Part shown: positions 33,248 to 59,045 of the stretch, one piece after another | Position numbering within the stretch: the first letter of the stretch is position 1 | Layout of the letters: each line of letters opens with the position of its first letter | IMG/VR virus record: IMGVR_UViG_3300017763_000002 | Location: 62,001 to 126,000 of that record | Strand: one strand, 5' to 3' | DNA length: 64,000 bases | Program-made: the position numbers and the translations under genes | Notes under the pieces: model-generated | What the model saw: only the letters and a program-made list of their open reading frames with translations | Told to the model about the DNA's origin: nothing | The model's database searches: none

Positions 33248-33981
33248 ATCCAAAAATAGCCCTTTTATTTAGTGGCAAACTTGGAGCGTGGGAAGAATGC
33301 TCAATGTCAATAGTAGAAAATATCATATGGCCACTAAGACCAGATGTTTTCGTAACAACTTGGGACGATCAACCATCTTACGATTTCTGTAAATATTACA
33401 ACCCAGTAAAAAGAGAAATACTAAATTTTAAAAACACAATGGACTATCTAGGCCCTACAGATACATTATCCTGTCAACCTAACCCCGGCTTGATACCCAT
33501 GCTTGCTGGCTTCAAGGTTGCAAACACAATGCTTCAGAATCACCGCAAGAAGTATGATTTAGTTATAAGACTACGCCCCGACGTTCAGGTTTTAGATTCT
33601 ATAAAAATTCATGAAAAAAAAGACTGCCTAAAAAACAAACATATAAGACTACCTCTCTTCGAAAGTACAAATATATATAATCATGAAGAAGAGTTAAAAA
33701 AAGAATTTAACTTTAGTTTTGTTTATGAAAAAGCTTCACTACCAGATCAAGTTAATGACCAAATAGCTATAGGACATCCAGATCAAATGAATAAATACCT
33801 AAATTCTCTTTTTAGTGTTGCTACAGTTATAAATGAAATGTGGGATCAGGGTTATCCAGAATACATGATGAAAGTTCCAGAATCTGTACTCACAATGTGC
33901 TTAAAAAAACAACAATGTAAATACAAAAGATTAACTGGATCCTCACAGCAGGGAAATATAAAAACCAAACTAATAAAATGA
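33238..33981 (+). CDS. Putative glycosyltransferase-like protein (KIALxxSG family)
   Basis: KIALLFSGKL; DVFVTTW; KYDLVIRLRPD; NDQIAIG. Start refined to ATG 33238 after AGGAGG. Confidence 0.55.
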   Translation: MDLNPKIALLFSGKLGAWEECSMSIVENIIWPLRPDVFVTTWDDQPSYDFCKYYNPVKREILNFKNTMDYLGPTDTLSCQPNPGLIPMLAGFKVANTMLQNHRKKYDLVIRLRPDVQVLDSIKIHEKKDCLKNKHIRLPLFESTNIYNHEEELKKEFNFSFVYEKASLPDQVNDQIAIGHPDQMNKYLNSLFSVATVINEMWDQGYPEYMMKVPESVLTMCLKKQQCKYKRLTGSSQQGNIKTKLIK

Positions 33982-35363
33982 TTAATCTTGTAATATTCGA
34001 TTTGGATGGAGTGCTTATAGACTCTAGGGAACTCCACTTTAAATCCTTCAACGAAGCACTTCTTAATATTTGCCCTGATTACGCTATAGCTAAAGACGAA
34101 CACCTTTCTACTTATGATGGTCTACCCACCAAAAGAAAGCTAGCGTTATTAACAGAAAACAAAGGGTTGCCAAGTTCTAAATACAATGATATCTGGCAAG
34201 AAAAACAGAAAATTACATTAAAATTAATGAACGAGTATACTAAAGATGATAAATTGTACGAAATACTTTCCGAACTTAAAGAAATGAATCTTAAAATAGG
34301 TTTAGCCTCTAATTCCATAAGGCAAACTATACTATCAGCCATGCACAATAAAGGCGTTTTGCATTTCTTTGATTATATTTACAGTAATGAAGATGTTATA
34401 AGACCAAAACCAAACCCAGAAATGTATTATAAAATAATGATTCAAAGCGGCATACCTTCTAGTGAAACTTTAATATTAGAGGATTCCAATACAGGTAGGC
34501 GAGCTGTTTATAATTCTGGAGCACATCTAGGCGCAATTAAAGATCCCGACGATTTAACAAAAGACAAAGTTATGAGCTATATACAAACAATAAAACAAAA
34601 AACCAACGCAAAAACAAAATGGGAAGGGGGAGATATGAACGTATTAATCCCTATGGCTGGAGCAGGAAGCAGGTTCGAACAAGCGGGGTATTCTTTTCCT
34701 AAGCCGCTGATTGACGTCAAAGGTCACCCAATGATTAAGATCGTAGTGGACAGTTTAAATATTAACGCTAATTATATATTCATTGTGCAAAAATCACATT
34801 ATGAAAAATATGCATTAAAACATACATTAAACTTGATAGCTCCTAATTGCAAAATCATTCAAGTAGACGGTCTCACAGAAGGAGCAGCATGCACAACTCT
34901 ACTCGCAAAAGAATTAATAAATAATAATAAACCATTATTAATTGCAAACTCAGATCAATATCTAGACTGGGACAGCAATCAATTTATGTATTCAGTTACT
35001 GCAGATAATGTAGATGGAGGCATACTCACCTTTCCCTCCACCCACCCAAAGTGGAGTTATGCAAAATTAGCACCTGATGGATTTGTCAAAGAAGTTGCAG
35101 AGAAAAAACCCATTAGCGAACATGCTACCGTAGGAGTTTATTTTTTCAGAAAAGGCGAGGATTATGTTTCAGGAGCAGAACAAATGATAAGTAAAAATAT
35201 TAGAACTAACAACGAGTTCTATGTTTGCCCTGTATATAATCAGTGTATTAATAATAATAAGAAATATAAAATCTTCAATATAACAGAAGATAGCATGTGG
35301 GGTTTAGGTACTCCTGAAGATTTAGAATTCTTTATTAAAAACAATGAAACTTATAGCTCATAG
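33978..35363 (+). CDS. HAD phosphatase fused to a sugar/polyol nucleotidyltransferase
   Basis: HAD motifs FDLDGVL, KPNP and ILEDS; C-half LIPMAGAGSRF..PKPLIDV..TEGAACT..ANSDQ..VKEVAEKK..EFYVCPVYN..GLGTPEDL. Confidence 0.85.
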   Translation: MINLVIFDLDGVLIDSRELHFKSFNEALLNICPDYAIAKDEHLSTYDGLPTKRKLALLTENKGLPSSKYNDIWQEKQKITLKLMNEYTKDDKLYEILSELKEMNLKIGLASNSIRQTILSAMHNKGVLHFFDYIYSNEDVIRPKPNPEMYYKIMIQSGIPSSETLILEDSNTGRRAVYNSGAHLGAIKDPDDLTKDKVMSYIQTIKQKTNAKTKWEGGDMNVLIPMAGAGSRFEQAGYSFPKPLIDVKGHPMIKIVVDSLNINANYIFIVQKSHYEKYALKHTLNLIAPNCKIIQVDGLTEGAACTTLLAKELINNNKPLLIANSDQYLDWDSNQFMYSVTADNVDGGILTFPSTHPKWSYAKLAPDGFVKEVAEKKPISEHATVGVYFFRKGEDYVSGAEQMISKNIRTNNEFYVCPVYNQCINNNKKYKIFNITEDSMWGLGTPEDLEFFIKNNETYSS

Positions 35364-39123: not shown

Positions 39124-39127
39124 ATGC

Positions 39128-39156: not shown

Positions 39157-39172
39157 TTATAGCTAATAAACT

Positions 39173-39709
39173 ATGAATCTAAGTCTATATAAACCAAACA
39201 GTAAGAATACTGGGTGCGCTTTTAATTTTAGTATTGGTCAAGGATCTAAAAACCTTCCTGCACTTTATGTCAGCGCTATTCAGCAGCATAGCTGGGACTC
39301 TAAAACCAAAAAAGGTAGTTTCTCAGAGAGTAAAGAAGATCCTAATAAAAACATCAATGTTAAGTTCAATGAGTGGGAGGTAGGATCAATGATTTCTGCC
39401 TTTAACAATCGTCACGAATACTCAGCGTATCATACTTTTGATGAAAATTCTACAACAATCAAACTAACCCCTTGGGATAAAGTAACCAAGTCTGGGGATA
39501 AAAGCATTACTCTTCCAGCTTTTGGAGTAGTATTTACCAGAAACGGCAATCAACAATTTAGACTACCATTAGAGCCCGGAGAAGTAGAAGCTCTTAAAAT
39601 ATTTTTTAAAAAATATCTCGAAGAATACATATTAGCAACTCGACAGAATTATAAACAAAACAATACAAAAACAAAAAGCGTTACAGACTCAGATGAAGCG
39701 CCTTTTTGA
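39173..39709 (+). CDS. Hypothetical protein with an SSB-like acidic C-terminal tip
   Basis: 178 aa beta/alpha protein ending TDSDEAPF; downstream of a consensus sigma70 promoter. Confidence 0.65.
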   Translation: MNLSLYKPNSKNTGCAFNFSIGQGSKNLPALYVSAIQQHSWDSKTKKGSFSESKEDPNKNINVKFNEWEVGSMISAFNNRHEYSAYHTFDENSTTIKLTPWDKVTKSGDKSITLPAFGVVFTRNGNQQFRLPLEPGEVEALKIFFKKYLEEYILATRQNYKQNNTKTKSVTDSDEAPF

Positions 39710-41655
39710 TGAATAAAAAAAAGATACTATTTCATAGTAATTCATCTAAAGCTTTAACTGGTTTTGGAAAAAACGCTAGAAACATATTATCTTATCTATA
39801 CTTAACAGAAAAATATGATATTGTAGAAATATCCAACGGCATACAAGAGAACGATCCAAAGTTAAATCTTATGCCGTGGAAGTGTTTAGGTGGGATTCCC
39901 TCTGACCCAGATTCAATAAATAGAATCAAGACTGATAGTAGTTTTAAATCTAAAGCGCTTTATGGTGGATTAAGAATAAAAGAAATAATAGAAGAAGAAA
40001 AACCTGATGTTTACATTGGTTCGGAAGATATATGGGCTTTTTCAGACTGGTGGAATAGTAGGTGGTGGAAAAAAATAAACACTATTCTCTGGACTACCAT
40101 TGACTCTGTGCCAATTCTACCTGCAGCTATAGATGGTTACGAAAATTCAACTCATTTTTTTACTTGGTCTAAGTTTGCAGCAAAAGAAATGGTTAATTCT
40201 GGATGCGCAGAAGTATCACACCTTCACGGGCCAGTAGACTGTAAAAATTTTTATAAATTAAATAAAGACAAAAAAAATAAAATAAGAGAATCTTTCAATA
40301 TAAGTAGCGATACTTTTATTATCGGGTTTGTTTTTAGAAACCAATTACGCAAAACTGTACCAAACTTACTAGACGGCTTTAAAAAGTTTAAAGAAAAATC
40401 TCAATCAAACGCTAAACTCTTATTACATACTAATTGGCAAGAAGGTTGGGATATACCAAAACTACTAAAAGAAAAAGGTATAGCTAACAACGAAATATTA
40501 ACAACTTATTATTGCAAAAAATGCAAAAAATATGAAATAAAACCTTTTGCGTCAGATGAAAAATCTAAAGGTGAAAACTTAACCTGCCCCTTTTGCTTTT
40601 CAAAAAAATCTCAAAACACAATAAGTATTGATGCTGGTCTATCAGAGTCTCAGTTAAATGAGATATATAATGTAATGGATGTATATTGCCACCCTTTTAC
40701 CAGTGGTGGGCAAGAAATACCTATACAAGAAGCTAAGCTTTGCGGCTTGATTACCTTAGTTACAAATTACAGTTGTGGAGAAGACTGTGCGCACAAAGAT
40801 TCTGGAGGCATACCTTTAAAATGGAATGAATATCGGGAGCCAGGAACCCAGTTCATCAAGGCTAGCACCTGCCCAAATAGTATCTGCAGTAGCTTACTCA
40901 AGGTATATGTAATGAGTGAAGAAGAAAAAAATAAAATGTCAGAACAAGCAATTAATTTTGTATTAAAAAACTATTCCATCGAAAATACTTGCAATAAACT
41001 AATGAGCTTTATAGATGAATATAAAAAAGTCGATTGGGATTTTAAAATATCTAAACTTAAACCTGATATATCCTACGCAATGCCCACTAAATGTAGCGAC
41101 AAAGACTTTATATTAAATATATACAGCAACATGCTCAAGATGGAAATTAGTGAAAAAAATAAAATATATAAATTTTTACTAGAAAAATTAAAATCTGGTA
41201 CAAAACGAGAGCAACTCTTCCAAGCTCTCAAAAAAACCGCAACACAAGAATTAGAACAGCTTTCAAAAACAAACAAAAGCCTTGAAGAAGTATTGTTAGA
41301 AGATAAAGAAAGTAAAAAAATAGCTATCGTCTTACCGAAAAGTATTGGAGATGTTTTCCTATCTACATCTTTATTTCCAGAGATAAGAAAAAATTATCCA
41401 GACTACAAAATATATTATGTAACCAACCCAGAATTTTTTAGCATACTAGAAGGCAACCCATATATACATAAAGTATTACCCTATACCTATCAATTTTTAG
41501 ATTCTCTGTATCTCGAAGGATTCTCTAATCGTACAGACAGAAAGGATCATGATGGCTTCTTTGACATATCAATCCTACTCAATACACACACACAAAGAAT
41601 ACCTAATTATACCAGAAACGGAATTGATAAAATAGGGATAGAATTATGCACTTAA
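39706..41655 (+). CDS. GT4-like glycosyltransferase with a CxxC..CxxC insert, fused to a GT9 N-terminal lobe
   Basis: TGFGKNA; GFVFRNQLRK; CKKC..CPFC; HPFTSGGQEIPIQEAKLCG. C-terminus KKIAIVLPKSIGDVFLSTSLFPEIRKNYPDYKIYYVT..LEGNPYIHKV. Confidence 0.75.
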   Translation: MMNKKKILFHSNSSKALTGFGKNARNILSYLYLTEKYDIVEISNGIQENDPKLNLMPWKCLGGIPSDPDSINRIKTDSSFKSKALYGGLRIKEIIEEEKPDVYIGSEDIWAFSDWWNSRWWKKINTILWTTIDSVPILPAAIDGYENSTHFFTWSKFAAKEMVNSGCAEVSHLHGPVDCKNFYKLNKDKKNKIRESFNISSDTFIIGFVFRNQLRKTVPNLLDGFKKFKEKSQSNAKLLLHTNWQEGWDIPKLLKEKGIANNEILTTYYCKKCKKYEIKPFASDEKSKGENLTCPFCFSKKSQNTISIDAGLSESQLNEIYNVMDVYCHPFTSGGQEIPIQEAKLCGLITLVTNYSCGEDCAHKDSGGIPLKWNEYREPGTQFIKASTCPNSICSSLLKVYVMSEEEKNKMSEQAINFVLKNYSIENTCNKLMSFIDEYKKVDWDFKISKLKPDISYAMPTKCSDKDFILNIYSNMLKMEISEKNKIYKFLLEKLKSGTKREQLFQALKKTATQELEQLSKTNKSLEEVLLEDKESKKIAIVLPKSIGDVFLSTSLFPEIRKNYPDYKIYYVTNPEFFSILEGNPYIHKVLPYTYQFLDSLYLEGFSNRTDRKDHDGFFDISILLNTHTQRIPNYTRNGIDKIGIELCT

Positions 41656-42809
41656 TAGAAAATTACGCGTTAAATGCAGGGGTAAAAATAGATCGACCTT
41701 TTATCGATCCTTCTTTCTTTCCAGTGCCCTCAGATAATTATATTACTATACATTGCTCTTCAGGAATGCAGTCTAAAAACTTTGATTATTATGAAGACGT
41801 AGTAAGATTAATAAAACCATATTTAGACGACAAAGGTATAGATATTTTTCAAATAGGTTTAGAAGGGGAGCCTATCATTAACAATGCAAACACTTTATTA
41901 GGACAAACAAACATCAGGCAAGCGGCATATGTAATCAAGAACTCAAAGCTTCATTTAGGAAACGATTCTTTTGCATGTCATTTTGCTAGCCACTTTGATA
42001 TACCCATTGTAGCACTATATGGTCCAGCAGTCAAAGAGACCTGTAAACCTTATTGGGGAGACAAGTCTAAGCACATACTACTTGAGCCAGAACTAAAAGG
42101 GTTTAAGCCGTCTTATAGCGCACAAGAAAGAACGAAAAGAGTAAACACTATATGCACTTTCAAAATCGCTTCCGCAGTATTAGACTTACTTCACATTAAA
42201 CACAATATAAACAATAAACAAATTTTCATTGGAGATAGTTATCATTTACCAACAATTGATGTAGTACCAAACTTCGATCGTTCTAATAAAAAAGAGCTAG
42301 ACGAAATTAACGGCATTAATATAAGGCTCGATTATGAAGAAGACAATTCATATATAGAACAATGGTTATCATCCAATCCTGTAAATATTTATATTAATTC
42401 TCATAAACAATTAGATTATATTAAAAAATACATTGATAATATAAAACAAATCCATGTTACGCTAGACTTAAATTCAATTGACTCCCTAGCAGCAGAGGTC
42501 TACTCCCTCAACAAACCATGCTTCTTTTATAGCAAAAATAATAAAGACCTCTCAAAGGTTAGAATTAAATTTTTTGATGTAGATGTTATGGCTCTAGACT
42601 CTAAACAAGAAAATTACCTTGACATTTCTAAAGAAATATGCGATAATTACTTTCAATCATCACTTAAACTATATTCAAATAATAAAATATATCCATGCAA
42701 AGCATATCTAAATATCGACAAAAGCCCCAGCGACAAACAAAAATGCTTAAGTACAGATGACTTTTATACAGAACTAGTATTCTTTAAAATTTATAAAACA
42801 AATGACTAA
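41646..42809 (+). CDS. GT9 C-terminal lobe plus additional domain
   Basis: MHLIENYA (interlobe linker-like); YITIHCSSG..SK; IFQIG; TNIRQAAYVIKNSKLHLGNDSFACHFASHFDIPIVALYGP. Confidence 0.7.
   Translation: MHLIENYALNAGVKIDRPFIDPSFFPVPSDNYITIHCSSGMQSKNFDYYEDVVRLIKPYLDDKGIDIFQIGLEGEPIINNANTLLGQTNIRQAAYVIKNSKLHLGNDSFACHFASHFDIPIVALYGPAVKETCKPYWGDKSKHILLEPELKGFKPSYSAQERTKRVNTICTFKIASAVLDLLHIKHNINNKQIFIGDSYHLPTIDVVPNFDRSNKKELDEINGINIRLDYEEDNSYIEQWLSSNPVNIYINSHKQLDYIKKYIDNIKQIHVTLDLNSIDSLAAEVYSLNKPCFFYSKNNKDLSKVRIKFFDVDVMALDSKQENYLDISKEICDNYFQSSLKLYSNNKIYPCKAYLNIDKSPSDKQKCLSTDDFYTELVFFKIYKTND
42619..42647 (+). promoter_or_regulatory. Intragenic sigma70-type promoter
   Basis: TTGACA-17 nt-GATAAT with TGn, inside the upstream CDS, about 155 nt before the ATG at 42802. 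Confidence 0.5.
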
Positions 42810-43563
42810 AACAAAAACAGCAAAATTAGGCCCAGACATGTTTTCCAGAGATGAAAACGGTTTACTAAGTAATTCAGATTACCATTTTAATGAAGATGGA
42901 TCTGTAAATTGGAGGTCTATGATACAAAACGAACATTTATTTCCAAACAGAGATTGGTTTAAAACTAGAAGCCAAACCATGCCCAGGACAGTAGAAGGAC
43001 TAAAGGATCATCAACTCTTAATTAAACTTAGCGGTATCAAAGAGCTCGCAAGACTAAGAGGATTTAAATCAATTAATTATAAAGTAGTAAAGTGTGAACA
43101 AGATCACGTCGCAGTAATTTGTGAAATCGCTTTTCTTCCAAACTATGAAACCGGAGGTGAAGAGGTGGTTTTTCAAGACATGGCCAATGCTACCATTCAC
43201 AACACTAGTGATTTTGGCCAAATCTTTTTAGAAACGATTGCATGCAATCGTGCGTTTGTTCGCTGCGTAAGAAACTTTTTAAATATTCACATTGTGGGGG
43301 ATGATGAAATCAATAAAAACAATGGTAAGACCAACCCAAATTTAACCAAAGATTCTAGCCCAAGCTCAATATCTCCATCAGAAATATTAAAAACTAGTGC
43401 TTCTAATAAAATGAATTGCTCTGATTTTGAAGACTTCAAGCAAGTTCTTAGAGACTGGTGGAGAGAAGAAAAGTATAGACACGAACAAGCTTCAGCATGG
43501 GAAGATTGGAGTGATATACCTGCCTCAGAACTAAGAGTTTTACTTAAGCTTATCAACGGCTAA
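42802..43563 (+). CDS. Putative single-strand annealing recombinase (Rad52/ERF/RecT-like)
   Basis: LLIKLSGIKELAR..HVAVICEI..DMANAT..LETIACNRAFVRCVRNFLNI..DEI matches the AETRAxxRAxRxxLGI...EE pattern. Confidence 0.5.
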   Translation: MTKTKTAKLGPDMFSRDENGLLSNSDYHFNEDGSVNWRSMIQNEHLFPNRDWFKTRSQTMPRTVEGLKDHQLLIKLSGIKELARLRGFKSINYKVVKCEQDHVAVICEIAFLPNYETGGEEVVFQDMANATIHNTSDFGQIFLETIACNRAFVRCVRNFLNIHIVGDDEINKNNGKTNPNLTKDSSPSSISPSEILKTSASNKMNCSDFEDFKQVLRDWWREEKYRHEQASAWEDWSDIPASELRVLLKLING

Positions 43564-46500
43564 AGATAATTCTTTTATTTTTTCTTCTAAATATTCTATT
43601 TTAGAATTTTGTTCCTTCATAGCTTCGATTAACAAAGGAGTAATTTTTTCATATTTTACTTTTAAACCCAGCCTTCCTTCTTCAACAACTTCAGGTAATA
43701 CTTCTTTTATTTCTTGCGCAATAACCCCAACGTCATTGCCTGAATAGATACTTTGGTTATCTTTCCATTTAAAAGATACTCCAGATATTTTCATTAGTTT
43801 ATCTATTGAATTACTTATTGGTAGAATATTAGTTTTGTATTTTTTATCTGACAAAGCAAATGATATAACGTCTCCAGTAAAAAACGCTCCACCGTCAGCA
43901 GCAACAAATACTCTAGTTAATTTTGATATCTCTACAGTGTCATCAACCATAGGATTACCAATATAAAAACTGTTTTGAACCATTTCTGTTTCAGTTAAAT
44001 TAAAGTTAGTTCCAAAAATACCCAAGTTGGACACTTCCACTTGATCAGAAATTCTAATTTTATTATCTGTACCTAATATAGTTACCTCTGAAGCGACTTG
44101 AGCTATAGATGCAGCAGCAGTATTACCATCAGCTTGCTTGATTAGCAGTTCATTATTCGAACCCAATATAGAAAGTTTAGATGCATTTCTAACTAAGTTA
44201 GCTCCCCCAAATATAACGTTTGACATTTGTCCGTAATCAGTAGGTGTCCCAGACGCACCATTAACGGCTTGCCAGCTAGACGTATATCCAGAAGAAGCTG
44301 CAGTAGAGCTTTCTCCTAAAGAAGACAACACTGCTTGATTATCTCTACCAAATACTATAAACCCTTGAGCTAAAGACTCGCTTGAAGTTTTTTGCTCTCC
44401 AATAATAAGGTTATCTACCCCACTTATTAAGCCTCGTTCAATGAATTTTATTTTATTATTACGCCCTCCAACAACCGTAGATCTTCTTGATGAAATTACT
44501 TGATTGTAATCTCCCCCGAATATACTATTAAAAGAAAAATGTCCTATAGAAGACGAAGAAGGGTCAGGTACAGCTACAGATATTTGTTTTTCTGTTGGCG
44601 TGTCCAAAGTACTACTGGCTGTAAAATTGGCAACGGGGGTGTCAGCGGCATCAATCGTCGCTGCGTTTCTGTGTGTTGCCGTTTCAAAACTACTTTGAAC
44701 ATCACTTTTATTTGATAATTTAATTTGCTTAGTCGTTTGGTCTATTTGTATTTTATAAGTATTATCAAGTCCTTGAATTTTTATATAAGGCCATAAACTA
44801 GTGTGGGTTTTTACGACGCAGTATTTAAATGTATTACCATCAATAAACCCAAGCTTAAAAGTTCTTGTGGATTGCTGAGTGCTATCTCCCACTCTTATGC
44901 ATACAGGTTTGTTATTTTCAGTTAAATATCCTGTATCAAAAGTTCTTTCTGGAGAAGAAGCCGCCTGTTGCTGTGACTCATTAAAACAAAGCTCCCCAAA
45001 TATATTAAACGCATCATTAGCATAATTAGAAGCTTTATCAAAACCCAAGTAAAGTTTGTATGAACTAATTGATTTATATAAATTAAAATCAGCATCAGTT
45101 CTCCATCCTGCTACATAGGACGGATGAGTTTCACCAACTTTAGCGTTAATCTTTCCAGGGTCTGAAAATTTTTCTTGTAAAATAATTTTATATCTCTGAT
45201 TATTTGTAACAGCGGCATTATTTAAAACATCTGTATTTACTCCATCAACTGAAGCGAATCCTTTTACATATATTTCGGTAATAACATCATTTGTATCATA
45301 AGTTATATTTGAAGGAGATATAGAACTTTGTGTTGTTCCTCCTCCAATATAATTATTAAATCCATTTATAATAGATCCATATATAGAATGCTCAATAGTA
45401 TTTGCAAAACCAGAACCAACAAATGAATAACTAGAATTTTCTATTGAATTATTTGAACCAGACAATACAGCGTTTATTCCTGAAGTATTAACTCCTGAAT
45501 TAGATTCTGTCCTATCTACTCCAATGCTATTATAATAACCCCCTCCTATAGTTGAAAAAGAATCGCCTATAGCGTTACCAAACCCGCCGCAAATAGATGA
45601 AAATCTGGCGGGATATGAAACCCCATAAGAAGAGATTACATTATTACCTCCACCCACAATAGATGATGCCAAAGTTCCATAATAAGCAGCTGCCATATTT
45701 CCGCTTGAGTCAAGATTACTAAGGTCAACTTCATTTAATATTTTATTATTAAAACCGCCACCAATAAATGTTTGATTGCCTACTTGAGGGTTAGTTGGTT
45801 TTAAAGTTAATGCTGTAGACGAAGAACTCATAACTCCAAATAAATCGTCTTTCACTGAAGCCTCTATGATGCCTCCTCGGATAATTAAATTCTTACCATC
45901 CCATCTTAAATAATTACCAAAAGGACTATACATTTCTAGTTGCGAAGTTAAGTAAGTTTCATACGCATTACCTGAGCTTTTTAAATATTGTGCAGTAGTA
46001 GACCCTAAGAAAAATCCTGGAAGAAAGTCTCGAGGTGTTTTGTAAGTTTTTCCTGAGGCGACAGCTTTACTTAAATCGCTAAGCCCCATGAAATCTCCAC
46101 CGTCAAAAACTTGAGCTTCAACTCTCGTTGCGCTAGTCACAGTATTACCGCTATTGTCTGTTATATCACCAGTATCTATAATGTTTCCTCTTGGATTATC
46201 AGGAATAAATCTTGGTTCTAATTGACTAGCAATAAATCCAGATTGCCCAGAGCCTGCGGACTCTATTGCGGTATCAATACCAACAACTATACCTTTCTTT
46301 ACAAGTATATCATCTGCAAGCAACAAGCTTGTTGCGGTAGGCTGAAGAACATTATCTATTTCTTGCCAGTATTGTTCTTGTTGTGTTGATTGAGTTCCAT
46401 CTAAAGCTGCCGGTGTTATTCCGCTTATATAATTAGTGGTCTGTTGAGTTGAGCTATCATACCCCTTACTAACTCCCCCTTGAGAAGTAGAACCTCTAAT

Positions 46501-49500
46501 AATATAATAAAACCTAGTTACATTATTACCGCTAACAGTAACTTCCCATGACACCATATCTTGACTAGTATCGTCTCCAAAATATTTTGACTCAGGAGTA
46601 TACCCTCCTCTAAATTGAAAGCTAGGACCAGCTTTACCTTGTTGACTAATTCCTAAATTCATTCTCGGCACAAGAGATTGTACTTGAGACAATTTATTAA
46701 TGTATACTTTAATTGGGAATCCAAAAGACATAGAAGTGTGCTCGTTTCCGCTAGTATCTTTAATCGCATTCTTTTCATTCATGCCAGTTAAATCAACACA
46801 GGCTTCGATTGAATTGTTTCTTGTATACAAAGTTACTAAAGGTTTATTAGCTGCTGGTGTTAGTGGCGTAGCGGGTTCCGTAGCGCCGACATCTTTATCA
46901 AAATTTAAATTAGAAACACTACAATCTATATTATTAGCAGCAGAATCAACAGCGGAAAATGGCTGTATAAAATCATCTTCTGAAAGAGAAACGTCATATC
47001 CATCTTGATGCCAGTTTAAAGTAAAATGCCCTACAGGTTGACTCGAATTATTTAATAATACCATTTTCTTTTTACGAGCGTCATCGCTAGGTAAAAAAGT
47101 GGTTGTATTTTCCACAATCAAGCTGGTAGCATTCACATCGCTCAAGGATATAGACTCATAATTGTTAATTGCAGAACTTGATATAGTAATATCATTACCT
47201 TCTGGATCTTTTAGCGAAAAAGAATCAGGAGCAGTAGATGCATTCATAATCCCATCGTATTTTATGTAATTAACAGTAGTATCCAGAGTAAATACATAAT
47301 TCGTCCCGCTCTTAGACAGAGTAATTTTATTAGGAGCTAGGAAAACTTTTTTATTACCTCTAAAGATTTCTACTTCAGATAATCCAGCCCCTCTTGTAGC
47401 GTTTACAATGTTCTTTGATTCATCAGCATTACCAGTAACCGAAGAATTTGTTAGCGCAGATAGTAATGGGTTTTCTCCGTCTTTAGCTAGCTCTATAATG
47501 TTAAGTTGTTGTACGTCTTTATGTGTTATTTTATTAGCTGTAATGCCTTGGTCGTTTATATTTAATGTAGCTTTTAAACTAATTTTTCCTGCTTTTTTAG
47601 CAGCCTCATCTCCTACTGCAGATTTTGGAATAAAATAATAATAATCATCACTCTCGCTTACAATAATAGTTGTTGAAATTCCAGCTTCATTTTTTTCTTT
47701 AAAACACCATTCGTTCGAACTTGTAGACCCAATGTATTTTTGAAAGAGTTGGTATTCTTGAGTTTTGTCTTCAGCCAAAGACGCAGGAAGAGTTCCGAAA
47801 GTATTTTGAATATCTGTTTCAATATTAGGGTAGTCTCCCACCGTTGTACCAAAATCCATTGTTGCTCCATCGTAATTATATCCATACAACAATCCTTTCA
47901 AAGCTTTTCCATTAACAATATACCCAAAACTAGGAACAACAACAAGAACATCATCACTATTAATTGGCGCTGTATCCTGTCCATATAAAACTTGAAATGG
48001 CACAATATTTTCTAACCTTAATATATTATTTTTTACAGACCCTTGCTCTCTAGAGAAAAATATAAATTGTCTAGGCAGCACAACATTAAGGTTCTTAGGC
48101 ACATCTATTTCGTTTACTATAGATATTTCTTCTTTAGCAGATGCCCCGCTGTCTCTAGATTTAATTAATAAAGATATTCTTCTTACATCATTTGTATTAT
48201 CAACATCAACAATAGCTTCGTAACCTGTATCGTTAGAAGTATCTGTGCTTACAGTGATATTGCTCTTAGTTAAAGTTGCCCCGCTAGCAGCCTCTAGCTC
48301 TATAGTGCCTTGTAATGTCTGAATTAGATCATTATTACCAGCACTATAGTTTGCTTCCCAATATATTGTCTTTTTGTCATTAGGTCCAAATGCTGAGATT
48401 TGTCTATTTGTCCCAGAAACTCCAATCGAACGCTCAATTACATTTAATAAATCATCATTATCTCTATCTGTAGTACTATGAAAAGTTAATACTCCTGAGT
48501 TTACTCCAGATGGAACCATATCCACAGTTTCTGCGGCGATTTCATTTGATCCGTAAAACGCTGAAAATTTTATTTGCAGTCCGGCGATTTGATTATAACC
48601 AAAACTCTCTCGATATAATTTATTAGCAGTATCTAGAGTCGTTGCTCCTTCTTGTGAAAGTCTAAAGTTTATATATTCTATTTTATTTTTTGCAGCATTA
48701 GCTTTGCCTATTAAAATTTTACTAACAGGATTCCATTTTGTTGACGCTGTAATTGTTACTTCAAAATCACTTACAGCTGGAGGCGCGCTGCCAGTATTAT
48801 TCTGCACACACATGTACTTATTACTATTATGAACTACAACATCTCCAGCAACATACGCTTTCGCAGGGTCATAGCTTGTAGGAGTAACGCCCAGTATCAT
48901 TTCCCTGTATATTTCAATTTCGTCTATTCCATTTAAAGCCCATACATCTAATACTGTTTGATCTAATTTAATTCTAGCTTCAGTGCCATAATTAGCAAAC
49001 ATATTTACTTCCGACAAAACTCCAGATCCGTTTCGACTATTTTGCATTACTTGCGAACTAGGCGAGCCTTTTAACTCATAAGCTATAGCACTAGCTGGCT
49101 CGATAAATGATTCTATAATTTTTCTTTGTGATGCGACCAATCTGTCTTCTCCAGCGCCCTCATTCTCCCAATAGGTTGAGCCAACAACCCCGTCAAGTGC
49201 AATGTTTTGGTTCGAAGAGTCCTTGCTAGGAACATTTCTTTTTGCCGTATACTTATTACCGCTATCCAACACAACATCTCCCGCATGATACTCACGACCT
49301 GGAACGTGATCAATTAAACCACTATCATAATATAATTCAACATCAACAGTAAAATATTCAGGTATTCTAATTACCCCATTTTCTTTTATTAAAAATTTAT
49401 GATTGTATATTCCATCTGCTTGTTCTTTGGGAGTAGGATCAACATTAGCTTCGTCTGTAAAATTTAAACTAAATTGAGTAGTTCCGTTGTTTATATCATC

Positions 49501-52500
49501 GGTATCATTATAAGATATACTATTTCCATCAGGCTCTACAGAATTTATATAACAAGTGCCAGTTGTACTTGATTTAAAATTTGCTAGAGTTACAGCTGAT
49601 GCGTCTGTTTTATCTTCTGGATATACTTTTACTCTAAAGTTTGCGTTAGTTAGAGGTGTGCCGTCACTAAAAACGGCGTTATCAATGTCCACGAATATAT
49701 TTACTATCTCTGAAGACGGAGATTCTATCAAAGAGCTTTCTGGATGCCCTTCAACTTGTATTTCATTGAATACTACAGTATCTATGTCAGATCTAATATC
49801 AACGCTCGCTACAGCCTTTCCAGACGGCTGCACTAACCTACCCCGAAGAACCAGTTCGTCGTTTTGAAAACTTAAAGAACTACCAGATGTAGTAGAAAAA
49901 GAAAATGTTCCGTCTCCGTTTATCCAAAAACCAGGATATCCTCCATATATACCACCATAGTTTTCACTTTTAATTATTCCGTATTTACTAAATTTATTTT
50001 CGTTAGCACCTGGAGAATTTCCTGTGATTGTATTAGAATGCTGAACTGCGGTTTCTGCTTTTTGTCCTAAAATAATTTCATGACCTTGTATTGTTCCACC
50101 TGTAATTGTGTCTGCTGTAAGGTCGTTGACATGAGCGCTTTTTATAGAAGCTTCGTCTATCATTGCAGAGCCAATTACCGCATTAGCGAATGCGTGCCAT
50201 GCAGATGATACAGAATACGAACTACCTATCTTATTAACTCTAGCAATTACTATAGATCCAGACTGAGTATTTCCCGAAGAGTCTTTAGAATTTGCGCCAA
50301 CAAGAGAAGTTCTTTCTCCATGAGAATTCATTTCTCCATCGGCTTCCAAAGGCATGTGCATGCCATAATGTTTTCTTATTCCAACGTTTACAGGGTCAGT
50401 AGTTACAGCTGTTCCTGCTCCGTATTTTTTATGACTTTTCCAAGTATTATCGTTAAAAACTTCTAGATCTAAATCTTTTTTTACAGGATTGGCTCCAAAA
50501 TAATCTTCATGAGTCAATCCAGATCCATTATACAAAGAATTATTCCCAAGATCACTTATATTATATGCAGCGCTTGAAGGATTAAACATTGAAAAAGAAT
50601 AATATCCCTGAGTTTGAAATGTAATATTCTGATCAACGTCATTTAGCTTCTTCCATGCAGCTTCATCAGTTGCGTCTACAGCTTTTTTAAATTCTTGATT
50701 AGCAGAATCATAACCACCATCTTTATTCCAATAGATATATTTTATAAATCTATTAGCATTTGCGCTAGCCCACTCATCATGGCCGCTTACCACCGAAGAA
50801 GGAATATCAGTTCCCACAAATAATTCTTTTGTTAAGCTAATAGAGCCTGCCGGAATATAATGTGATTCTCCGTCTTTATATATAAAATGATTACTCCAAG
50901 ATAAATCAGATCCAGATACAGAAAAAGGATCACTTGGCACAAGAGCTACAGCCCCTGGCAGTTTTCCAGTGATATCTTGTTCAAAACTTGCTATATCTGT
51001 AACTTTAGTTTGCCCTAAAGTATATCCAGCATCTAATTCTAAAAACCCACTACGATTTCCAGCTTTATCTATAGCTTCAATAAAGAAATATCCCGTTTGA
51101 TTTGTCTCTCCTTCGATTTGGAGAGAGGTAGTAGAACACATAAATTGCTCTACTGTAACATAATTAGTAGGGCTTAAGGGAGATACTGGTAAAGAAGAAT
51201 TGAATCCATCTAAAGTTAACACTCCTGAAGTATTAGTTATATTTGTGATCCTTCTATCCAAATAAATAGAATCTGTTGTATTTTCCACCACCGATATTTC
51301 AGCCCTACTTCCATCGGCTTTAAAAATAGTAGCCATGTGAAGATCGTTTACTGCTGTTCCAGTAACATCTCGACTCCATTTTACATAATCTTTATTGGTA
51401 GTAGCTTTAGTAAAAGAAATGTTAGAACCAGAGTCAATATCCTGCGCAGTTCTATGATCTCTAACCATAGTAACTTTATACTCTATTGACTTTTCTCCGT
51501 CAGCTGGGGTGTCCCATTCTAAAAACCAGTTTTTAAATGATGTTTTTACTCCTCCGCTTGCTGGAGCAGAAGGAGCACTAGTGTCTAGAGCGCCAACAAA
51601 ACCCCTGTCGTTTCTACTGAACAACTTATAACTCGCAACCTTTACTTGATTTACAATAAAATTATCGCCAGGACCAAAATCATCGTAAGGCACCAATATA
51701 TAATCATATTCTGTAAAGTTCTCTAATATTTTTTTACCAGAAGAATCCGAGGTTCTAAGTAAAGGTACATTTTCATCAAACAAGGTTGACTGATTATCGT
51801 CATTAATAGATAAAGAGTTCGCTCCTTCAGTCGTTTGTGTCTTTACTAAATATTTAGCTTTTTTAAAATTAAATCCAGCGCCAGTAGATCTGTTTTTTAC
51901 TCCGGCGTCTTCACCAAAATCTATTGTAGCTGGATCAGCATTATATTGAGCTGCTTTTACCGTATCTTCTGTTAAAGAATAATCTCCTTCTCCAGTTCCA
52001 CTAGGAGATTTTTGTCCATAAGTTTTTGTTGATGTTGGCTTTAGTTGTGGCCTTCTATAAATTTCTATATGGCTAATTTCTTCATTAAATTCTAAATTGA
52101 ACTTAACAGACCCAATAGTATCAAACACATCAAAACTAAATTCCTGTCCGCCAGTGCCAGTACCGTCTCTTTTAATTACTGGCTTAGCATTAGTCCCAGA
52201 AGCCGTGTCTTCATCAATAACTTGTCCAGCAGCGTCAAGAATTGCTAATCTAAAATTTAAAGTTCTATTAGCTTCAGTAGCGTTACCTCCATTTAGTTCA
52301 GTTTGTATTACAGCATTTTCTTCAAAAGTTATATTATCTATAATAGTTTTAAATGTTTCTTGTTTTAGATCTATTAACCTTAAGTCGCTTTTATTTATTT
52401 TTGACTTAAACCTACTATCGTCGGTTATTTTAAATGCATCGACCACATGAGTTCCAGACGCATCATAAAAGTACCCAACAATACCTTTGATAACTGCTAT

Positions 52501-53796: not shown

Positions 53797-53797
53797 A

Positions 53798-56700
53798 TTA
53801 GGTACTCTGTGTTAAATCTACTATCTCCACTATTTCTGGAGCCACTGGAGCCTCCATAGAAACTTGTGGGGGTATAGGGAATACTGGCTTTTGTATAGCA
53901 AGATCTTTTTCTATTAAGTCAAATTTGTCCCTATTATATTCTGAAGCTTTAATTTTATATTTTCCGGGATCCACTTCATCAATAGACACAATTCTATATT
54001 GCATTCTGCCCACATTTTTAAAGCTGTTTATATTTGCAACCATGTCGTTCTCAAAATTCTGGATTGAACTTTGTGAGCTATATGTATCAGGAGAAAAACC
54101 AGACAAATCACTTTCTAAAACTTCTCTATTTGAAATTCTAATATACTTTCCAGAACCAATTGCAGATACATCGAAAGAAGATTGACCAAGAACGATTGTT
54201 CCTGGCAACGTCGATCCTGTAGCTGAAGAGATATGGTATATGTCAGAATCTAATTCAACTCTCTCTAAAAAATATTTAGGCTCTAGAGTTACATTACCAG
54301 ATCCTATGGGCTCATGAACTAAGAATACATTTTGAGATATTTGCTTAATCCAACCTCCGTTTTCTCGATCCCCTCCAAGCCTAAAACTTTTTAACCAGCT
54401 GGCGTTCGGCGTGTTATATTTATATTGAAATTTGCTTTGATCAAAAGAGCCACCAACATCTATAATAACCTGTATATCTCCCAACCCTAAACCCTTCGAA
54501 GACTTCTGCCTAAGAGTTACCTTCTTTTGTGTTGAAGAGCTATCAAAATTTGATATATCAAAAATTTTATACCTCCCTAGCCAAGGAGACTTTTTATATA
54601 CTGAATCAGGTATATCCTCTCCGCCTAACTGCTGGTGAATAAAGTCTGTTTCTGCTGTGTCGTATTCTTGTATTGATTGTAAAGCATTTCTTTTGTATCC
54701 TCTTATCGACCAGACTGCGCCAATAGGTATTTCTGATAAATTTTGCAAAGTTTTTTGATTGTTTCCATATACATAATAATAATGCTCTCCACCTGGAATT
54801 TCTGGATATTCATTACCAGTCTCAACTTGAAAACCTCCGTCTTGAATTTGAACTAAAGTGCCACCATCAGAAATTTCAAAAGTATTTTTTTGTTGTGCTG
54901 CATCACTAATTAAAACTGTATAGTCTTTATTAGATTCTATTCCTGTAGGAAGCCTTCCGAAAGTTGTAAACCTTATAACGTCTCCATTAATAAGCCCATG
55001 GCTATTACTTAGAATGGTTGAGCCTCCAACGATCACATTAAATTTAAACTTAGATTTTAAATCTATTATAGAGTTAGAAACGTGATCAACAAATCCATCA
55101 AAATAAAGTAGTTGCGGACGAGATATTCCAGATATCATAGACATTTGCTCTTGAACATCAAAAGAATCTAAATTTTTTGCAAGACCAAACATTTTTTTAT
55201 ATAAACCAGTTTTATCTTTAGCCCCTTCTGAATTCTCTCCAACACTCTCATATCCCCTACCACACATAATTGTCAGCTCTACAGGATTTCTAGCGTCATT
55301 AGGCATGCTAGGGTTGTAAAAAGACAAATCATCCATAACTTTATCTACCAATACAGATCTTGAAGAAGTTTGTATTTTCTTAATTCTTCCATTTGCATTC
55401 TCTCCGTAGCGTCGAGAATCAGACACTTCAATTATCGCCCCTGGAGCAAGTAAAGAAGCTTCCATTCCAGTCTCAAAAGTAACATATTCATTTTCTAAGT
55501 TTGGAGCAAGAACCGTAAACTTAGCCAGCCTTCTGGCTTGTCCCCTAGAGGTGCATCCTACAGCCAGGATCTCTTCTAATTTATAACCAAACTTATCAAT
55601 TCCACCAGAATCTTCGTAGTACTCTACCTTACTCCTAAAATCATCAAACTTATCTGCGTACCTAACCTTACAAGCTGTAACTCTAGATGTCCTAGGGCTG
55701 CCAGCGTAACTAAAACCTTCTTCCGTTACATTTGAATCGGCGAATATCATGGATGGGTCCTTTTTAAACTCAGAAGCAAAAGATACTTTTCCTGCGCTGT
55801 AGGCAACAACCGTTCTAAATACAGTACATATTTCTTTTACAGCTCTCAACGCTTCTTCTTTTTCTTTGAATAACATATTAGCAGAAAACCTAGGCTCAAC
55901 GATTGGGTAACTAACAGACATCACGCAGCTGCCAGTAGAAATTCCAGTTGATTTGTCAGTAGACACGCTATCCCAAAAGTTAGGTCCAATTAAATTTATT
56001 TGTTGAGTTTCAGCATTCACGCTAACAACAGTTCTCTCCTCAATTGATCCGTCGCTCATAAAAAAAGCTATTTTTCTTCCTGCAGCGTACTTAGAATTAC
56101 TATTACCAAGATTAAATTCACTAATAAATGATAGTCGTTTTTCGCTTTGAGAGTTCGTATAGTCGTAATTTATTGTAACTGAAAATGTATTCTCACTTGG
56201 CTTTGTAGACAAAAAGATATTTCTACTTTGTTGAGACGCGGTGCTTGTAAATTTTCTTTTTGGATTTTCTAAAGGAAATCCTGTTTCAACTAGTTCGTCA
56301 CAAAATTTAGCTGCTGCGTAAAGCTTCCATATATCAATGTCTGCTATAGTAAACCCAAAAGAACCAACACCATAACGTCTATTGAGTAATATATCGGCCA
56401 ATATCCAAGCTGGATTATCAGTCCACTCTAAATATTCTTCTGTGATTGCTCCGTATGATAAGTCTTGTTTGCTCTGACCTTTAAAAAGCCCGTCCCAGGC
56501 GCCATGATATTTTCTAGACAAAGGGTTATAATTAGAAGGTACGGCGATTTTCTTTAGTTTCGCTATATAATTTCTTTCTGGAAGTTGCGGGAAGTTTACA
56601 GCGTCAAAAGGAACTTTAACACAAGCCACTCCTGGGTGAGAATATTTTATCGTCTTACCCATTAATCCGTCCATCGAAGTTATAGCAGACAAACTCATGT

Positions 56701-58696: not shown

Positions 58697-58699
58697 ACC

Positions 58700-59044: not shown

Positions 59045-59045
59045 C

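What the first reader, a model, noticed from the sequence alone, without database searches (positions are those of the whole stretch)
41314..42200. A GT9 heptosyltransferase-like enzyme split at its interlobe linker across two genes
The last ~110 aa of 39706..41655 are a GT9 N-lobe (IAIVLPKSIGDVFLST..YPDYKIYYVT..NPYIHKV) fused behind a GT4 enzyme. The next ORF starts at the linker-like HLIENY and supplies the C-lobe (GNDSFACH..PIVALYGP). The ORFs overlap by 10 nt in the -1 frame. That frame has a TAA at 41628-30 and no slippery heptamer is visible, so it looks like a true split rather than a frameshift. Inference: a heterodimeric GT4/GT9 assembly in which the GT9 active site forms only on complex formation.
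Basis: partly seen in the sequence, partly recalled or inferred. Interest (0 to 1): 0.6.

Follow-up and report, generated by a model that had tools for sequence, protein, structure and literature searches.

The report
Phage glycosyltransferase split across two genes
In an uncultured 205-kb marine phage, one sugar-transferring enzyme (a GT9-type glycosyltransferase) is encoded in two pieces on neighbouring genes. The first piece is welded to the end of a second glycosyltransferase, an arrangement kept in hundreds of related phages, so the enzyme most likely works only when the two proteins dock.

Summary
ORF1 (39706..41655, 649 aa) is a GT4-like glycosyltransferase with a DUF4214-like linker. 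Its last 113 aa (41314..41652) are the N-terminal Rossmann lobe of a GT9 enzyme. ORF2 (41646..42809, 387 aa) supplies the last N-lobe helix, the interlobe linker, the GT9 C-lobe and an extra 200-aa alpha/beta domain.

The split is not an error or a frameshift:
- Contigs from three independent studies cross the junction without an indel.
- All 84 fetched relatives that could be judged (75+) keep two genes. Their junctions vary: overlaps of 10, 13 or 14 nt and gaps of 4 or 14 nt, in both frame relations.
- In several phages an unrelated gene (cupin or DUF6165) sits between the two.

A sister clade has GT4, N-lobe and C-lobe in one chain. Other phages cut elsewhere: GT4 | N+C, or GT4 | LAGLIDADG endonuclease | N-lobe | C-lobe.

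The catalytic Asp (HepI Asp13 equivalent) lies on ORF1. The donor-site Asp, His and Lys lie on ORF2. All are conserved.

Complex prediction gave ipSAE 0.85 against a best control of 0.05.

I read this as an obligate two-subunit, two-active-site glycosyltransferase. Donor and acceptor are unknown. It is a new variant of a known kind: Alg13/Alg14-type split GT-B enzymes and phage genes-in-pieces.

The parts
39706..41655 (+). ORF1, 649 aa: GT4-like glycosyltransferase, then a DUF4214-like helical linker, then the GT9 N-lobe. The true start is probably the ATG at 39709.
   Evidence: Homologues of 630-680 aa lie upstream of the ORF2 homologue in the related loci.
39709..41025 (+). GT4-like GT-B domain (aa ~2-440). 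It contains a conserved CxxC...CxxC insertion at aa 270-297 (40513-40596).
   Evidence: phrog_2170 E 3.7e-23 over aa 4-437. Pfam PF00534 scores 30.4 bits, above the cut-off. The four Cys are conserved in L092.
41083..41295 (+). Helical linker region (aa ~460-530) with a weak DUF4214 signal.
   Evidence: PF13946 is weak here (E 0.081). It is clear at the same position in fused relatives (P0267 E 1.8e-11).
41314..41652 (+). GT9 N-terminal Rossmann lobe (ORF1 aa 537-649). The invariant catalytic-type Asp549 is at 41350-41352.
   Evidence: D549 in 20 of 20 sequences. It aligns with Asp13 of RfaF/HepII. The role of Asp13 is taken from bioRxiv 10.1101/2021.06.16.448588.
41646..41655 (+). 10-nt overlap ATGCACTTAA. 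The ORF2 start lies 7 nt before the ORF1 stop, so translational coupling is likely.
   Evidence: The same ATGCACYTAR overlap occurs in 42 loci. Only 7 of 50 distinct junctions have a Shine-Dalgarno-like motif.
41646..42809 (+). ORF2, 387 aa: last N-lobe helix, linker, GT9 C-lobe and an extra C-terminal domain.
41646..41735 (+). ORF2 aa 1-30: the last helix of the N-lobe (aa 2-11) and the interlobe linker. It is disordered in the monomer model and forms the main contact with the ORF1 tail in the complex model.
   Evidence: pLDDT 48-58 when folded alone. VIA-align places ORF2 2..184 on 3tov 134..344. Interface residues 3-21. M1, L3, K14 and P18 are invariant.
41736..42200 (+). GT9 C-terminal (donor-binding) lobe, aa 31-185. 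Key residues: Lys44 (41775-41777), Asp107 (41964-41966) and His112 (41979-41981).
   Evidence: PF01075 E 9.8e-9. RfaF 242-343 E 1.6e-10. Z 18.2 to RfaF. Conservation is 30 of 32 for each residue.
42201..42806 (+). Extra C-terminal alpha/beta domain (aa 186-387). Function unknown and no clear structural relative.
   Evidence: AF2 pLDDT 88.7. The best VIA Z is 7.9, to partial barrels of radical-SAM enzymes. The Atlas search gave only unnamed viral clusters.
39173..39709 (+). Conserved upstream cassette partner, 178 aa. Probably SSB-like.
   Evidence: A 173-189 aa gene is conserved at this place. A Pfam-recognised SSB occupies the place in L093, L095 and L096. The C-terminal D-E-A-P-F tip is like the SSB tail. 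The SSB assignment is inference.
42802..43563 (+). Conserved downstream cassette partner, 253 aa. Function unknown.
   Evidence: A 244-274 aa gene follows the ORF2 homologue in the related loci. No family match.

Best explanation
ORF1 and ORF2 are two real, separately translated genes of an uncultured ~205-kb marine tailed phage. Together they encode one GT9-type GT-B glycosyltransferase.

What each gene contributes:
- ORF1 carries a complete GT4-like glycosyltransferase. After a helical DUF4214-like linker it carries most of the acceptor-side N-lobe of the GT9 enzyme, including the catalytic-base Asp (D549).
- ORF2 begins with the last N-lobe helix and the interlobe linker. It then supplies the nucleotide-sugar-binding C-lobe (K44, D107, H112) and an extra domain of unknown role.

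Proposed mechanism:
- The N-terminal helix of ORF2 completes the Rossmann lobe on ORF1, and the two lobes close over a shared cleft.
- GT9 catalysis therefore needs the heterodimer.
- The complex holds two active sites (GT4 and GT9) and probably adds two sugars in succession to one acceptor.
- The 10-nt stop/start overlap probably couples translation of the two subunits.

Shown here: the gene structure, its conservation, homology of both halves to GT9, the natural fusions and the conserved catalytic residues.

Inferred: binding, activity, translational coupling and sequential action.

Open: the donor sugar and the acceptor (host envelope glycan, virion protein or DNA).
For: The split is real.
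- Contigs from three other studies cross the junction with 0 gaps.
- ORF2-type proteins of 379-412 aa cover 89-100% of ORF2 down to 33% identity and share the same first residues.
- 315 relatives were found in IMG/VR.
- In the 84 loci the upstream ~640-aa gene ends at the same motif, but the junctions differ: overlap 10 (42 loci), 14 (11) or 13 (6), and gap 4 (9) or 14 (3). Both frame relations occur and none is in frame.
- A cupin gene or a DUF6165 gene is inserted between the two genes in L060, L061 and L066-L071.

The two halves belong together.
- Single-chain relatives P0232, P0265, P0270, P0246 and P0267 run GT4, N-lobe, C-lobe without interruption.
- P0148 (8 contigs) carries N-lobe, C-lobe and the C-terminal domain in one gene behind a separate 522-aa GT4.
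- L092 has GT4 | LAGLIDADG gene | 147-aa N-lobe gene | C-lobe gene.
- ORF2 is the only PF01075 match in the genome.

Catalytic residues.
- D549 is present in 20 of 20 tails and aligns with RfaF Asp13.
- D107 and H112 are present in 30 of 32 sequences and align with RfaF D269 and H274.
- K44 is present in 30 of 32.

Structure.
- ORF2 aa 2-184 match 3tov 134-344 at Z 17.2, and the RfaF match is Z 18.2.
- ORF2 aa 1-20 have low confidence when folded alone.
- The complex of the ORF1 tail with ORF2 1-195 scored ipSAE 0.85, 0.85 and 0.87. The best of 3 controls was 0.05. That mark was reached by 58 of 80 solved complexes and 2 of 110 mismatched pairs. The runs agree in at least 86% of contacts and the partner pLDDT is at least 84.
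- The interface is the GD loop and first helix of the N-lobe against ORF2 aa 3-21 and 108-116.
Against: - There is no experimental evidence of binding or activity.
- The complex score may partly come from the model's memory of single-chain GT9 folds, and my own alignments were used, so the calibration holds only roughly.
- The Pfam GT9 model does not detect the N-lobe piece. The sequence evidence for it is modest for a single sequence (E 0.013) and rests on profiles, NCBIfam partial hits and the fusions.
- NCBIfam equivalog scores are far below their cut-offs (30.7 against 134.6 bits), so heptose transfer cannot be assumed.
- The phage has no GmhA-type gene.
- The mapping of K44 to HepI Lys192 is inferred from motif spacing, not from an alignment.
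Confidence: 0.75

Rival explanations
1. The two ORFs are one gene. An assembly indel or a programmed -1 frameshift near 41631-41655 produces a single GT4-GT9 chain.
For: The ORFs overlap in the -1 frame. Fully fused relatives exist in a sister clade.
Against: - Independent contigs show no indel.
- The ORF2 frame has TAA 16 nt before its ATG and there is no X XXY YYZ slippery site.
- Relatives use overlaps and gaps in both frame relations.
- Some relatives have a whole gene inserted between the two ORFs.
- The Met start of ORF2 is invariant.
Confidence: 0.02
2. ORF2 is self-sufficient. Its own C-terminal domain, or a homodimer, replaces the missing N-lobe. The GT9-like tail of ORF1 is a vestige or has an unrelated role.
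For: ORF2 carries an extra, well-folded 200-aa alpha/beta domain. The fused relatives P0232 and P0265 lack that domain.
Against: - The extra domain is not a GT-B Rossmann lobe. Its best Z is 7.9, to partial barrels.
- The ORF1 tail is strongly conserved, including the catalytic-type Asp (55% mean column identity, D549 in 20 of 20).
- The tail persists as a stand-alone gene when cut off from GT4 (L092, P0131 and others).
- The tail is always encoded next to the C-lobe gene.
- The disordered N-terminus of ORF2 is invariant in sequence and docks on the tail in the complex model.
Confidence: 0.1
3. The complex forms, but the split GT9 module is catalytically dead. It serves only as a docking or scaffold module that attaches the ORF2 C-terminal domain to the GT4 enzyme.
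For: Scores against the heptosyltransferase equivalog models are low. No ADP-heptose pathway gene was found in the phage.
Against: The Asp, Lys, Asp and His positions that bind and activate substrates in HepI/HepII are kept in 30 of 32 or 20 of 20 sequences over wide divergence (33% identity). A pure scaffold would not require that.
Confidence: 0.1
4. This is a decaying gene: a GT9 broken by a nonsense or frameshift mutation and on its way to loss.
For: None beyond the split itself.
Against: The same split is kept in hundreds of phages from marine and freshwater samples. Both halves are under clear constraint and the start and stop are preserved.
Confidence: 0.02

Closest known systems
GT9 heptosyltransferases (E. 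coli WaaC/HepI, WaaF/HepII; V. parvula 3tov; protein heptosyltransferase TibC)
   Same: The GT-B fold, the N-lobe GD motif with the catalytic-base Asp, and the C-lobe motif [GN]-D-S-x-x-x-H followed by a V-A-L-Y-G-P-like strand. Z 16-18 to these structures.
   Different: - The fold is spread over two polypeptides.
- The N-lobe is fused behind a GT4-like enzyme, and the C-lobe carries an extra 200-aa domain.
- Scores fall far below the LPS heptosyltransferase equivalog cut-offs.
- Donor and acceptor are unknown.
- It is of phage origin.
Alg13/Alg14 and bacterial/archaeal EpsF/EpsE: split GT-B UDP-sugar transferases (MurG relatives)
   Same: One GT-B enzyme is encoded as two genes, one lobe each, and must associate to work. 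That family also shows one ancient split followed by several re-fusions (PMC8993221). Here the fused and split clades separate at 100/100 support, and P0148 is a re-fusion nested inside the split clade.
   Different: - It is a different GT family, with no Alg14 or Glyco_tran_28_C signal.
- The cut lies one helix before the linker.
- The N-lobe piece is covalently tied to another complete glycosyltransferase rather than to a membrane anchor.
Phage 'genes in pieces', e.g. Aeromonas phage Aeh1 NrdA split by the mobE homing endonuclease gene (PMC3045599, PMC2988022)
   Same: A phage enzyme gene is cut into separately translated pieces that reassemble. In relative L092 a LAGLIDADG endonuclease gene sits exactly at a cut (GT4 | N-lobe) and an HNH gene follows the C-lobe gene.
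   Different: In the window no mobile element lies at the N-lobe/C-lobe cut, because the genes overlap by 10 nt. Whether an endonuclease caused the original fission is unknown.

Membership tests
CAZy GT9 / Pfam PF01075 Glyco_transf_9 | Pfam model match above the gathering score | tested here: met
   ORF2 scores 35.3 bits against a cut-off of 22, but only over profile positions 165-229. The ORF1 tail is not detected by the Pfam model.
CAZy GT9 / Pfam PF01075 Glyco_transf_9 | GT-B fold: two Rossmann lobes with a cleft between them | tested here: met
   The C-lobe and last N-lobe helix give Z 17-18 to RfaF, 3tov and WaaC. The N-lobe profile matches residues 2-67 of RfaF and 3tov. The two pieces are modelled together at ipSAE 0.85 against a control of 0.05. 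The fold is met only across two chains.
CAZy GT9 / Pfam PF01075 Glyco_transf_9 | Catalytic-base Asp in the N-lobe G-D motif (HepI Asp13) | tested here: met
   ORF1 D549 aligns with RfaF D13 and is invariant in 20 of 20 tails.
CAZy GT9 / Pfam PF01075 Glyco_transf_9 | C-lobe donor-binding residues (HepI Lys192, Asp261, His266) | tested here: met
   D107 and H112 align with RfaF D269 and H274 and are present in 30 of 32 sequences. The equivalence of K44 to Lys192 is inferred from motif spacing only.
CAZy GT9 / Pfam PF01075 Glyco_transf_9 | Both lobes on one polypeptide | tested here: not met
   This is an architectural habit of the family rather than a formal criterion.
LPS heptosyltransferases I/II/III (NCBIfam equivalogs TIGR02193, TIGR02195, TIGR02201) | Score above the equivalog cut-off (orthology, ADP-heptose to LPS core) | tested here: not met
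   ORF2 scores 30.7 bits against 134.6. The ORF1 tail scores 23.1 against 185.3.
LPS heptosyltransferases I/II/III | ADP-heptose as donor | not testable with these tools
   No GmhA-type SIS_2 gene in the phage. The host supply is unknown.
Alg13/Alg14 - EpsF/EpsE split GT-B | One GT-B enzyme encoded as two separately translated lobes | tested here: met
   The cut is one helix upstream of the linker.
Alg13/Alg14 - EpsF/EpsE split GT-B | Homology to Alg14 (PF08660) and Glyco_tran_28_C (PF04101) | tested here: not met
   Neither family is listed for ORF1 or ORF2 at E up to 1.
Phage genes-in-pieces made by homing endonuclease insertion | A homing endonuclease gene between the pieces | tested here: not met
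   In the window the pieces overlap by 10 nt. The feature is met only in relative L092, and at another cut: LAGLIDADG_3 E 1.7e-8.

The most novel reading that the evidence does not exclude
A large, so far uncultured group of aquatic tailed phages carries a modular 'glycosyltransferase in pieces'. One Rossmann lobe of a GT9 enzyme has been handed to a neighbouring GT4 enzyme, so the GT9 site exists only in a GT4/GT9 heterocomplex. The gene boundaries have moved repeatedly: fully fused, GT4+N | C, GT4 | N+C, and GT4 | N | C with a homing endonuclease at the cut. That makes a natural series of split and fused GT-B enzymes. The cassette always sits at the end of the replication module (DnaE or RNR, then an SSB-like gene) and faces a giant fibre gene. 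The complex might therefore glycosylate something unusual, such as phage DNA or the giant tail fibre, rather than LPS.
Probability: 0.3. Interest if true: 0.65.

Novelty: new variant of a known kind. Interest (0 to 1): 0.5.

Why it matters
- Split GT-B enzymes are known for the Alg13/Alg14-EpsE/F family. I found no report of a split GT9, nor of a GT-B lobe fused to a different glycosyltransferase (paper searches). This is absence in the held library, not proof.
- The family offers natural fused, two-piece and three-piece versions of one enzyme. That is useful for studying how GT-B lobes recognise each other and for engineering split glycosyltransferases.
- It warns annotators that a 'truncated GT9' next to a 'GT4 with an odd tail' can be a functional pair.
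- The ORF2 family is absent from 50,697 deposited phage genomes but abundant in metagenomes. It therefore marks an unstudied glycosylation function of environmental phages.

Tried and rejected
- DNA similarity of 39000-43600 to GenBank phages gave no match. tblastn with ORF2 gave no match. ORF1 gave only distant GT4 hits in Synechococcus phages S-EIVl and S-CBS4.
- Donor pathway. There is no SIS_2/GmhA gene. The single CTP_transf_like hit is far away in the genome. There is no Epimerase-family gene. Nothing points to ADP-heptose synthesis by the phage.
- DNA-glycosylation idea. No thymidylate-synthase-type hydroxymethylase was found. No Tet_JBP was found, but that search rang in no control genome, so its negative is weak. 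The idea is not supported and not excluded.
- ORF2 C-terminal domain. The Atlas feature search gave only unnamed viral clusters scoring 0.83 or less. The best VIA Z was 7.9, to radical-SAM partial barrels, which is below the trust level. hhalign against the radical-SAM-like part of the fused relative P0246 gave probability 0.4%. No assignment was made.
- The 178-aa upstream protein against a Pfam-recognised SSB from L093 gave BLASTP E 0.14, not significant. Only the C-terminal tip is alike.
- The 253-aa downstream protein has no family and no PDB sequence match.
- A Shine-Dalgarno motif before ORF2 is present in only 7 of 50 distinct junctions, so it cannot be used as evidence for independent initiation.
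- Run X1, the possible source sample, gave almost no usable contigs over the stretch. The conclusion rests on X3, X4 and X6.
Only genetic code 11 was used.
Full report
**What is there**

The window is bases 62001-126000 of a 204,906-bp IMG/VR virus record that CheckV rates as complete. On the + strand lie ORF1 (39706..41655, 649 aa) and ORF2 (41646..42809, 387 aa). They overlap by 10 nt (ATGCACTTAA). ORF2 is in the -1 frame, and that frame has TAA at 41628-30.

**Domain content of ORF1**

- It is a GT4-like GT-B enzyme: Pfam Glycos_transf_1 at 30.4 bits against a 26.4 cut-off, and phrog_2170 'glycosyltransferase' at E 3.7e-23 over aa 4-437.
- A helical region with a weak DUF4214 signal follows. 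The signal is strong at the same place in relatives.
- The last 113 aa are the GT9 N-lobe. They match positions 1-57 of the NCBIfam heptosyltransferase I, II and RfaQ models (E 3.8e-5 to 1e-3) and the first ~60 residues of the GT9 structures 3tov and RfaF. Those PDB hits are E 0.013 for the single sequence and 6.5e-4 for a profile of 20 homologous tails.

**Domain content of ORF2**

- It matches Pfam Glyco_transf_9 above the cut-off (35.3 bits against 22) over the C-lobe signature.
- Its family profile matches RfaF 242-343 at E 1.6e-10.
- The AF2 model (pLDDT 86.9) aligns over aa 2-184 with 3tov 134-344 (Z 17.2), RfaF 156-345 (Z 18.2), WaaC 140-320 (Z 17.0) and TibC (Z 16.1).
- Residues 2-11 (the 'HLIENY' helix) are therefore the last helix of the N-lobe. 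Residues ~12-30 are the linker and 31-185 the C-lobe. The cut lies one helix before the linker, not in it.
- Residues 186-387 form a separate, confidently folded alpha/beta domain (pLDDT 88.7) with no clear relative. Its best Z is 7.9, to partial barrels of radical-SAM enzymes.

**It is not an artefact or a frameshift**

- Logan contigs from three studies other than the possible source cross the junction without any inserted or deleted base. X3 covers 40500-42716 with 2 substitutions. X4 covers 41481-43000 with 3 substitutions. X6 covers 41564-41714 and is identical.
- The word search with ORF2 found 204 proteins. The 120 listed are almost all 379-412 aa and cover 89-100% of ORF2 down to 33% identity.
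- The aligned N-terminus begins at an invariant Met, followed by H-L-x-E-x-Y-A.
- IMG/VR holds 315 encoding loci.
- In the 84 loci fetched, a ~640-aa gene ending in the same N-lobe motif precedes the ORF2 homologue. The junction differs between lineages: overlap 10 nt (42 loci), 14 nt (11) or 13 nt (6), and gaps of 4 nt (9) or 14 nt (3). Both possible frame offsets occur and none is in frame.
- In L060 a cupin gene lies between the two genes, and in L061 and L066-L071 a DUF6165 gene does. No ribosomal slip can join genes that are 400 nt apart.

**The two halves belong to one enzyme**

An exhaustive profile search with the N-lobe tail (1,754 hits) found the domain almost always at the very C-terminus of ~640-aa proteins. 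The exceptions are informative.

- Five proteins (P0232 855 aa, P0265 836 aa, P0270 1171 aa, P0246 1106 aa, P0267 1564 aa) run GT4, N-lobe, C-lobe in one chain. The ORF1-like part ends within 2-10 residues of where the ORF2-like part starts, and there is no Met. They lie on phage-like contigs of up to 144 kb, again behind DnaE and SSB.
- P0148 (553 aa, 8 contigs) holds N-lobe, C-lobe and the C-terminal domain in one gene behind a separate 522-aa GT4.
- Many ~147-156-aa proteins are stand-alone N-lobes.
- In L092 the order is GT4 (507 aa) | LAGLIDADG endonuclease gene on the other strand | N-lobe (147 aa) | C-lobe gene (391 aa) | HNH endonuclease gene.
- A tree of the C-lobe region puts the five fully fused forms in one clade and all split forms in the other, each at 100/100 support. 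P0148 and L092 are nested among the split forms. This fits one old fission (or fusion) followed by later boundary shifts. The root, and hence the direction, is not established. All other GT9 enzymes are single chains, so fission is the simpler reading (inference).
- ORF2 is the only PF01075 match in the six frames of the whole phage genome, so the ORF1 tail is the only candidate partner.

**Catalytic residues**

[quoted passage not shown] Lys192, Asp261 and His266 in the C-lobe bind the donor (bioRxiv 10.1101/2021.06.16.448588, read).

- ORF1 D549 aligns with RfaF D13 and is invariant in 20 of 20 tails.
- ORF2 D107 and H112 align with RfaF D269 and H274 in the N-D-S-G-x-x-H motif and are kept in 30 of 32 sequences.
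- K44 is kept in 30 of 32, with Arg in the other two. Its equivalence to Lys192 is my inference from motif spacing.
- The residues needed for one reaction are thus divided between two polypeptides, and both sets are under selection.

**Complex prediction**

The ORF1 tail (135 aa, 20-row alignment) was folded with ORF2 aa 1-195 (32-row alignment). The three runs gave ipSAE 0.85, 0.85 and 0.87, and the best of three controls was 0.05. That mark was reached by 58 of 80 solved complexes and 2 of 110 mismatched pairs. The runs agree in at least 86% of contacts, and the partner pLDDT is at least 84.

The contacts are the G-D loop and first helix of the N-lobe (tail residues 32-46, 65-72, 109-113) against ORF2 3-21, 89-91, 108-116 and 136-137. 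That is the completing helix plus the cleft faces. ORF2 aa 1-20 have pLDDT 48-58 when folded alone, as expected for a segment that needs its partner.

The tool warns that a pass can come from memory of like structures. Here the 'complex' is a cut monomer of a known fold, so I take the result as showing that the pieces fit the GT9 fold. It does not measure binding.

**Likely mechanism**

ORF1 and ORF2 form a heterocomplex with two active sites, one GT4-type and one GT9-type. The GT9 site exists only in the complex. The stop/start overlap, together with the lack of a Shine-Dalgarno motif at most junctions (7 of 50), suggests translational coupling, but this is inferred.

Tethering the GT9 acceptor lobe to GT4 would hold two successive transfer steps on one acceptor (inference).

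**Donor and acceptor remain open**

- The phage has no GmhA-type gene.
- A beta-phosphoglucomutase-like HAD fused to a sugar-1-phosphate nucleotidylyltransferase lies 4 kb upstream at 33978..35363. The phage may therefore make a hexose nucleotide itself.
- The cassette (178-aa SSB-like gene, ORF1, ORF2, 253-aa gene) is co-oriented with replication genes: RNR in the window, DnaE and SSB in relatives.
- It is convergent with a giant fibre gene. In 54 of 64 distinct loci an open frame of 700 aa or more on the opposite strand starts within 2.5 kb. In the window this is the 3418-aa protein at 43540..53796.
- My rough odds for the acceptor are: host envelope glycan about 35%, virion protein about 30%, DNA about 20%, other about 15%. 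No hydroxymethylase or TET enzyme was found.

**Comparison with what is known**

- The closest functional analogue is the split GT-B pair Alg14/Alg13 and EpsE/EpsF. In that family, too, one old split was followed by several re-fusions (PMC8993221). This pair is not homologous to it.
- The closest homologues are GT9 heptosyltransferases. ORF1 and ORF2 are far below the equivalog cut-offs for these.
- Phage 'genes in pieces' such as Aeh1 NrdA (PMC3045599) are the closest evolutionary analogue. L092 shows a homing endonuclease gene at one cut, but the window's cut has none.
- The ORF2 family has no match in 50,697 deposited phage genomes.

**Verdict**

It is a new variant of a known kind. Interest is moderate at 0.5: a clean, widespread and so far undescribed natural split of a GT-B enzyme, with an instructive series of architectures but unknown substrates.

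Only genetic code 11 was used.

Noticed in passing
window 33978..35363 (+): A 461-aa fusion of a beta-phosphoglucomutase-like HAD hydrolase (HAD_2 E 2.6e-30) with a sugar-1-phosphate nucleotidylyltransferase (NTP_transferase E 2.2e-7, RmlA-like). It lies 4 kb upstream of the glycosyltransferase pair and could supply an NDP-hexose donor.
   Followed up: partly
window 39173..39709 (+): A 178-aa conserved gene directly upstream of ORF1. It ends in D-S-D-E-A-P-F, like the acidic tip of SSB proteins, and it occupies the place held by a Pfam-recognised SSB in L093, L095 and L096. There is no significant sequence match to SSB (BLASTP E 0.14).
   Followed up: partly
window 40513..40596 (ORF1 aa 270-297): A CxxC...CxxC motif (probable zinc ribbon) is inserted in the GT4-like domain. 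It is conserved in the 32%-identical homologue of L092.
   Followed up: no
window 43540..63967 (-): A run of very large tail genes: a 3418-aa fibre with a C-terminal S74-type chaperone region (PF13884 in the L001 homologue), a 1632-aa protein with Phage-tail_3, a tail protein L homologue, and a 1296-aa protein containing a Phage_min_tail domain. These are lambda-type tail-tip genes in greatly enlarged form.
   Followed up: partly
L092:2998-3948 (-) and L092:5634-6260 (+): A LAGLIDADG endonuclease gene sits between the GT4 piece and the N-lobe piece. An HNH-AP2 endonuclease gene follows the C-lobe gene. So there are homing endonuclease genes at two borders of the cassette in one phage.
   Followed up: yes
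L093:6001-10695 (P0267) and L093:1-5365: The fused GT4-GT9-GT2 protein of this 144-kb phage contig carries an intein (Intein_splicing E 5e-12) near its N-terminus. The neighbouring DnaE gene also carries an intein with a LAGLIDADG domain.
   Followed up: no
P0246 aa 846-992 (L095:6001-9321); window 42201..42806: In the fused relative P0246 a Radical_SAM-like domain (28.2 bits, just under the 29.5 cut-off) follows the GT9 part, at the place where ORF2 has its unknown C-terminal domain. The best structural neighbours of that ORF2 domain are radical-SAM barrels (Z 7.9), but it lacks a CxxxCxxC motif. hhalign shows no relation (probability 0.4%).
   Followed up: partly
L060:5601-5993; L061:5609-5995; L066:5591-5998: Small genes are inserted between the two glycosyltransferase genes in some phages: a cupin (Cupin_2 E 3.5e-9) in L060, and DUF6165 (E 1e-9 to 4e-8) in L061 and L066.
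   Followed up: yes
L096:9420-11493: The phage contig with the fused form P0265 carries two further single-chain GT9 genes (326 and 312 aa), another GT1-type gene and a thymidine kinase, all in the same operon-like run behind DnaE and SSB.
   Followed up: no
window 16945..19068 and 20380..24435 (+): Two large proteins (707 and 1351 aa) with thrombospondin type 3 (calcium-binding) repeats.
   Followed up: no
window 41684, 42236, 42395: Single-base differences (A>C, T>C, T>C) appear in contigs of other marine samples (X3, X4). Near-identical strains of this phage occur in at least three further studies.
   Followed up: no
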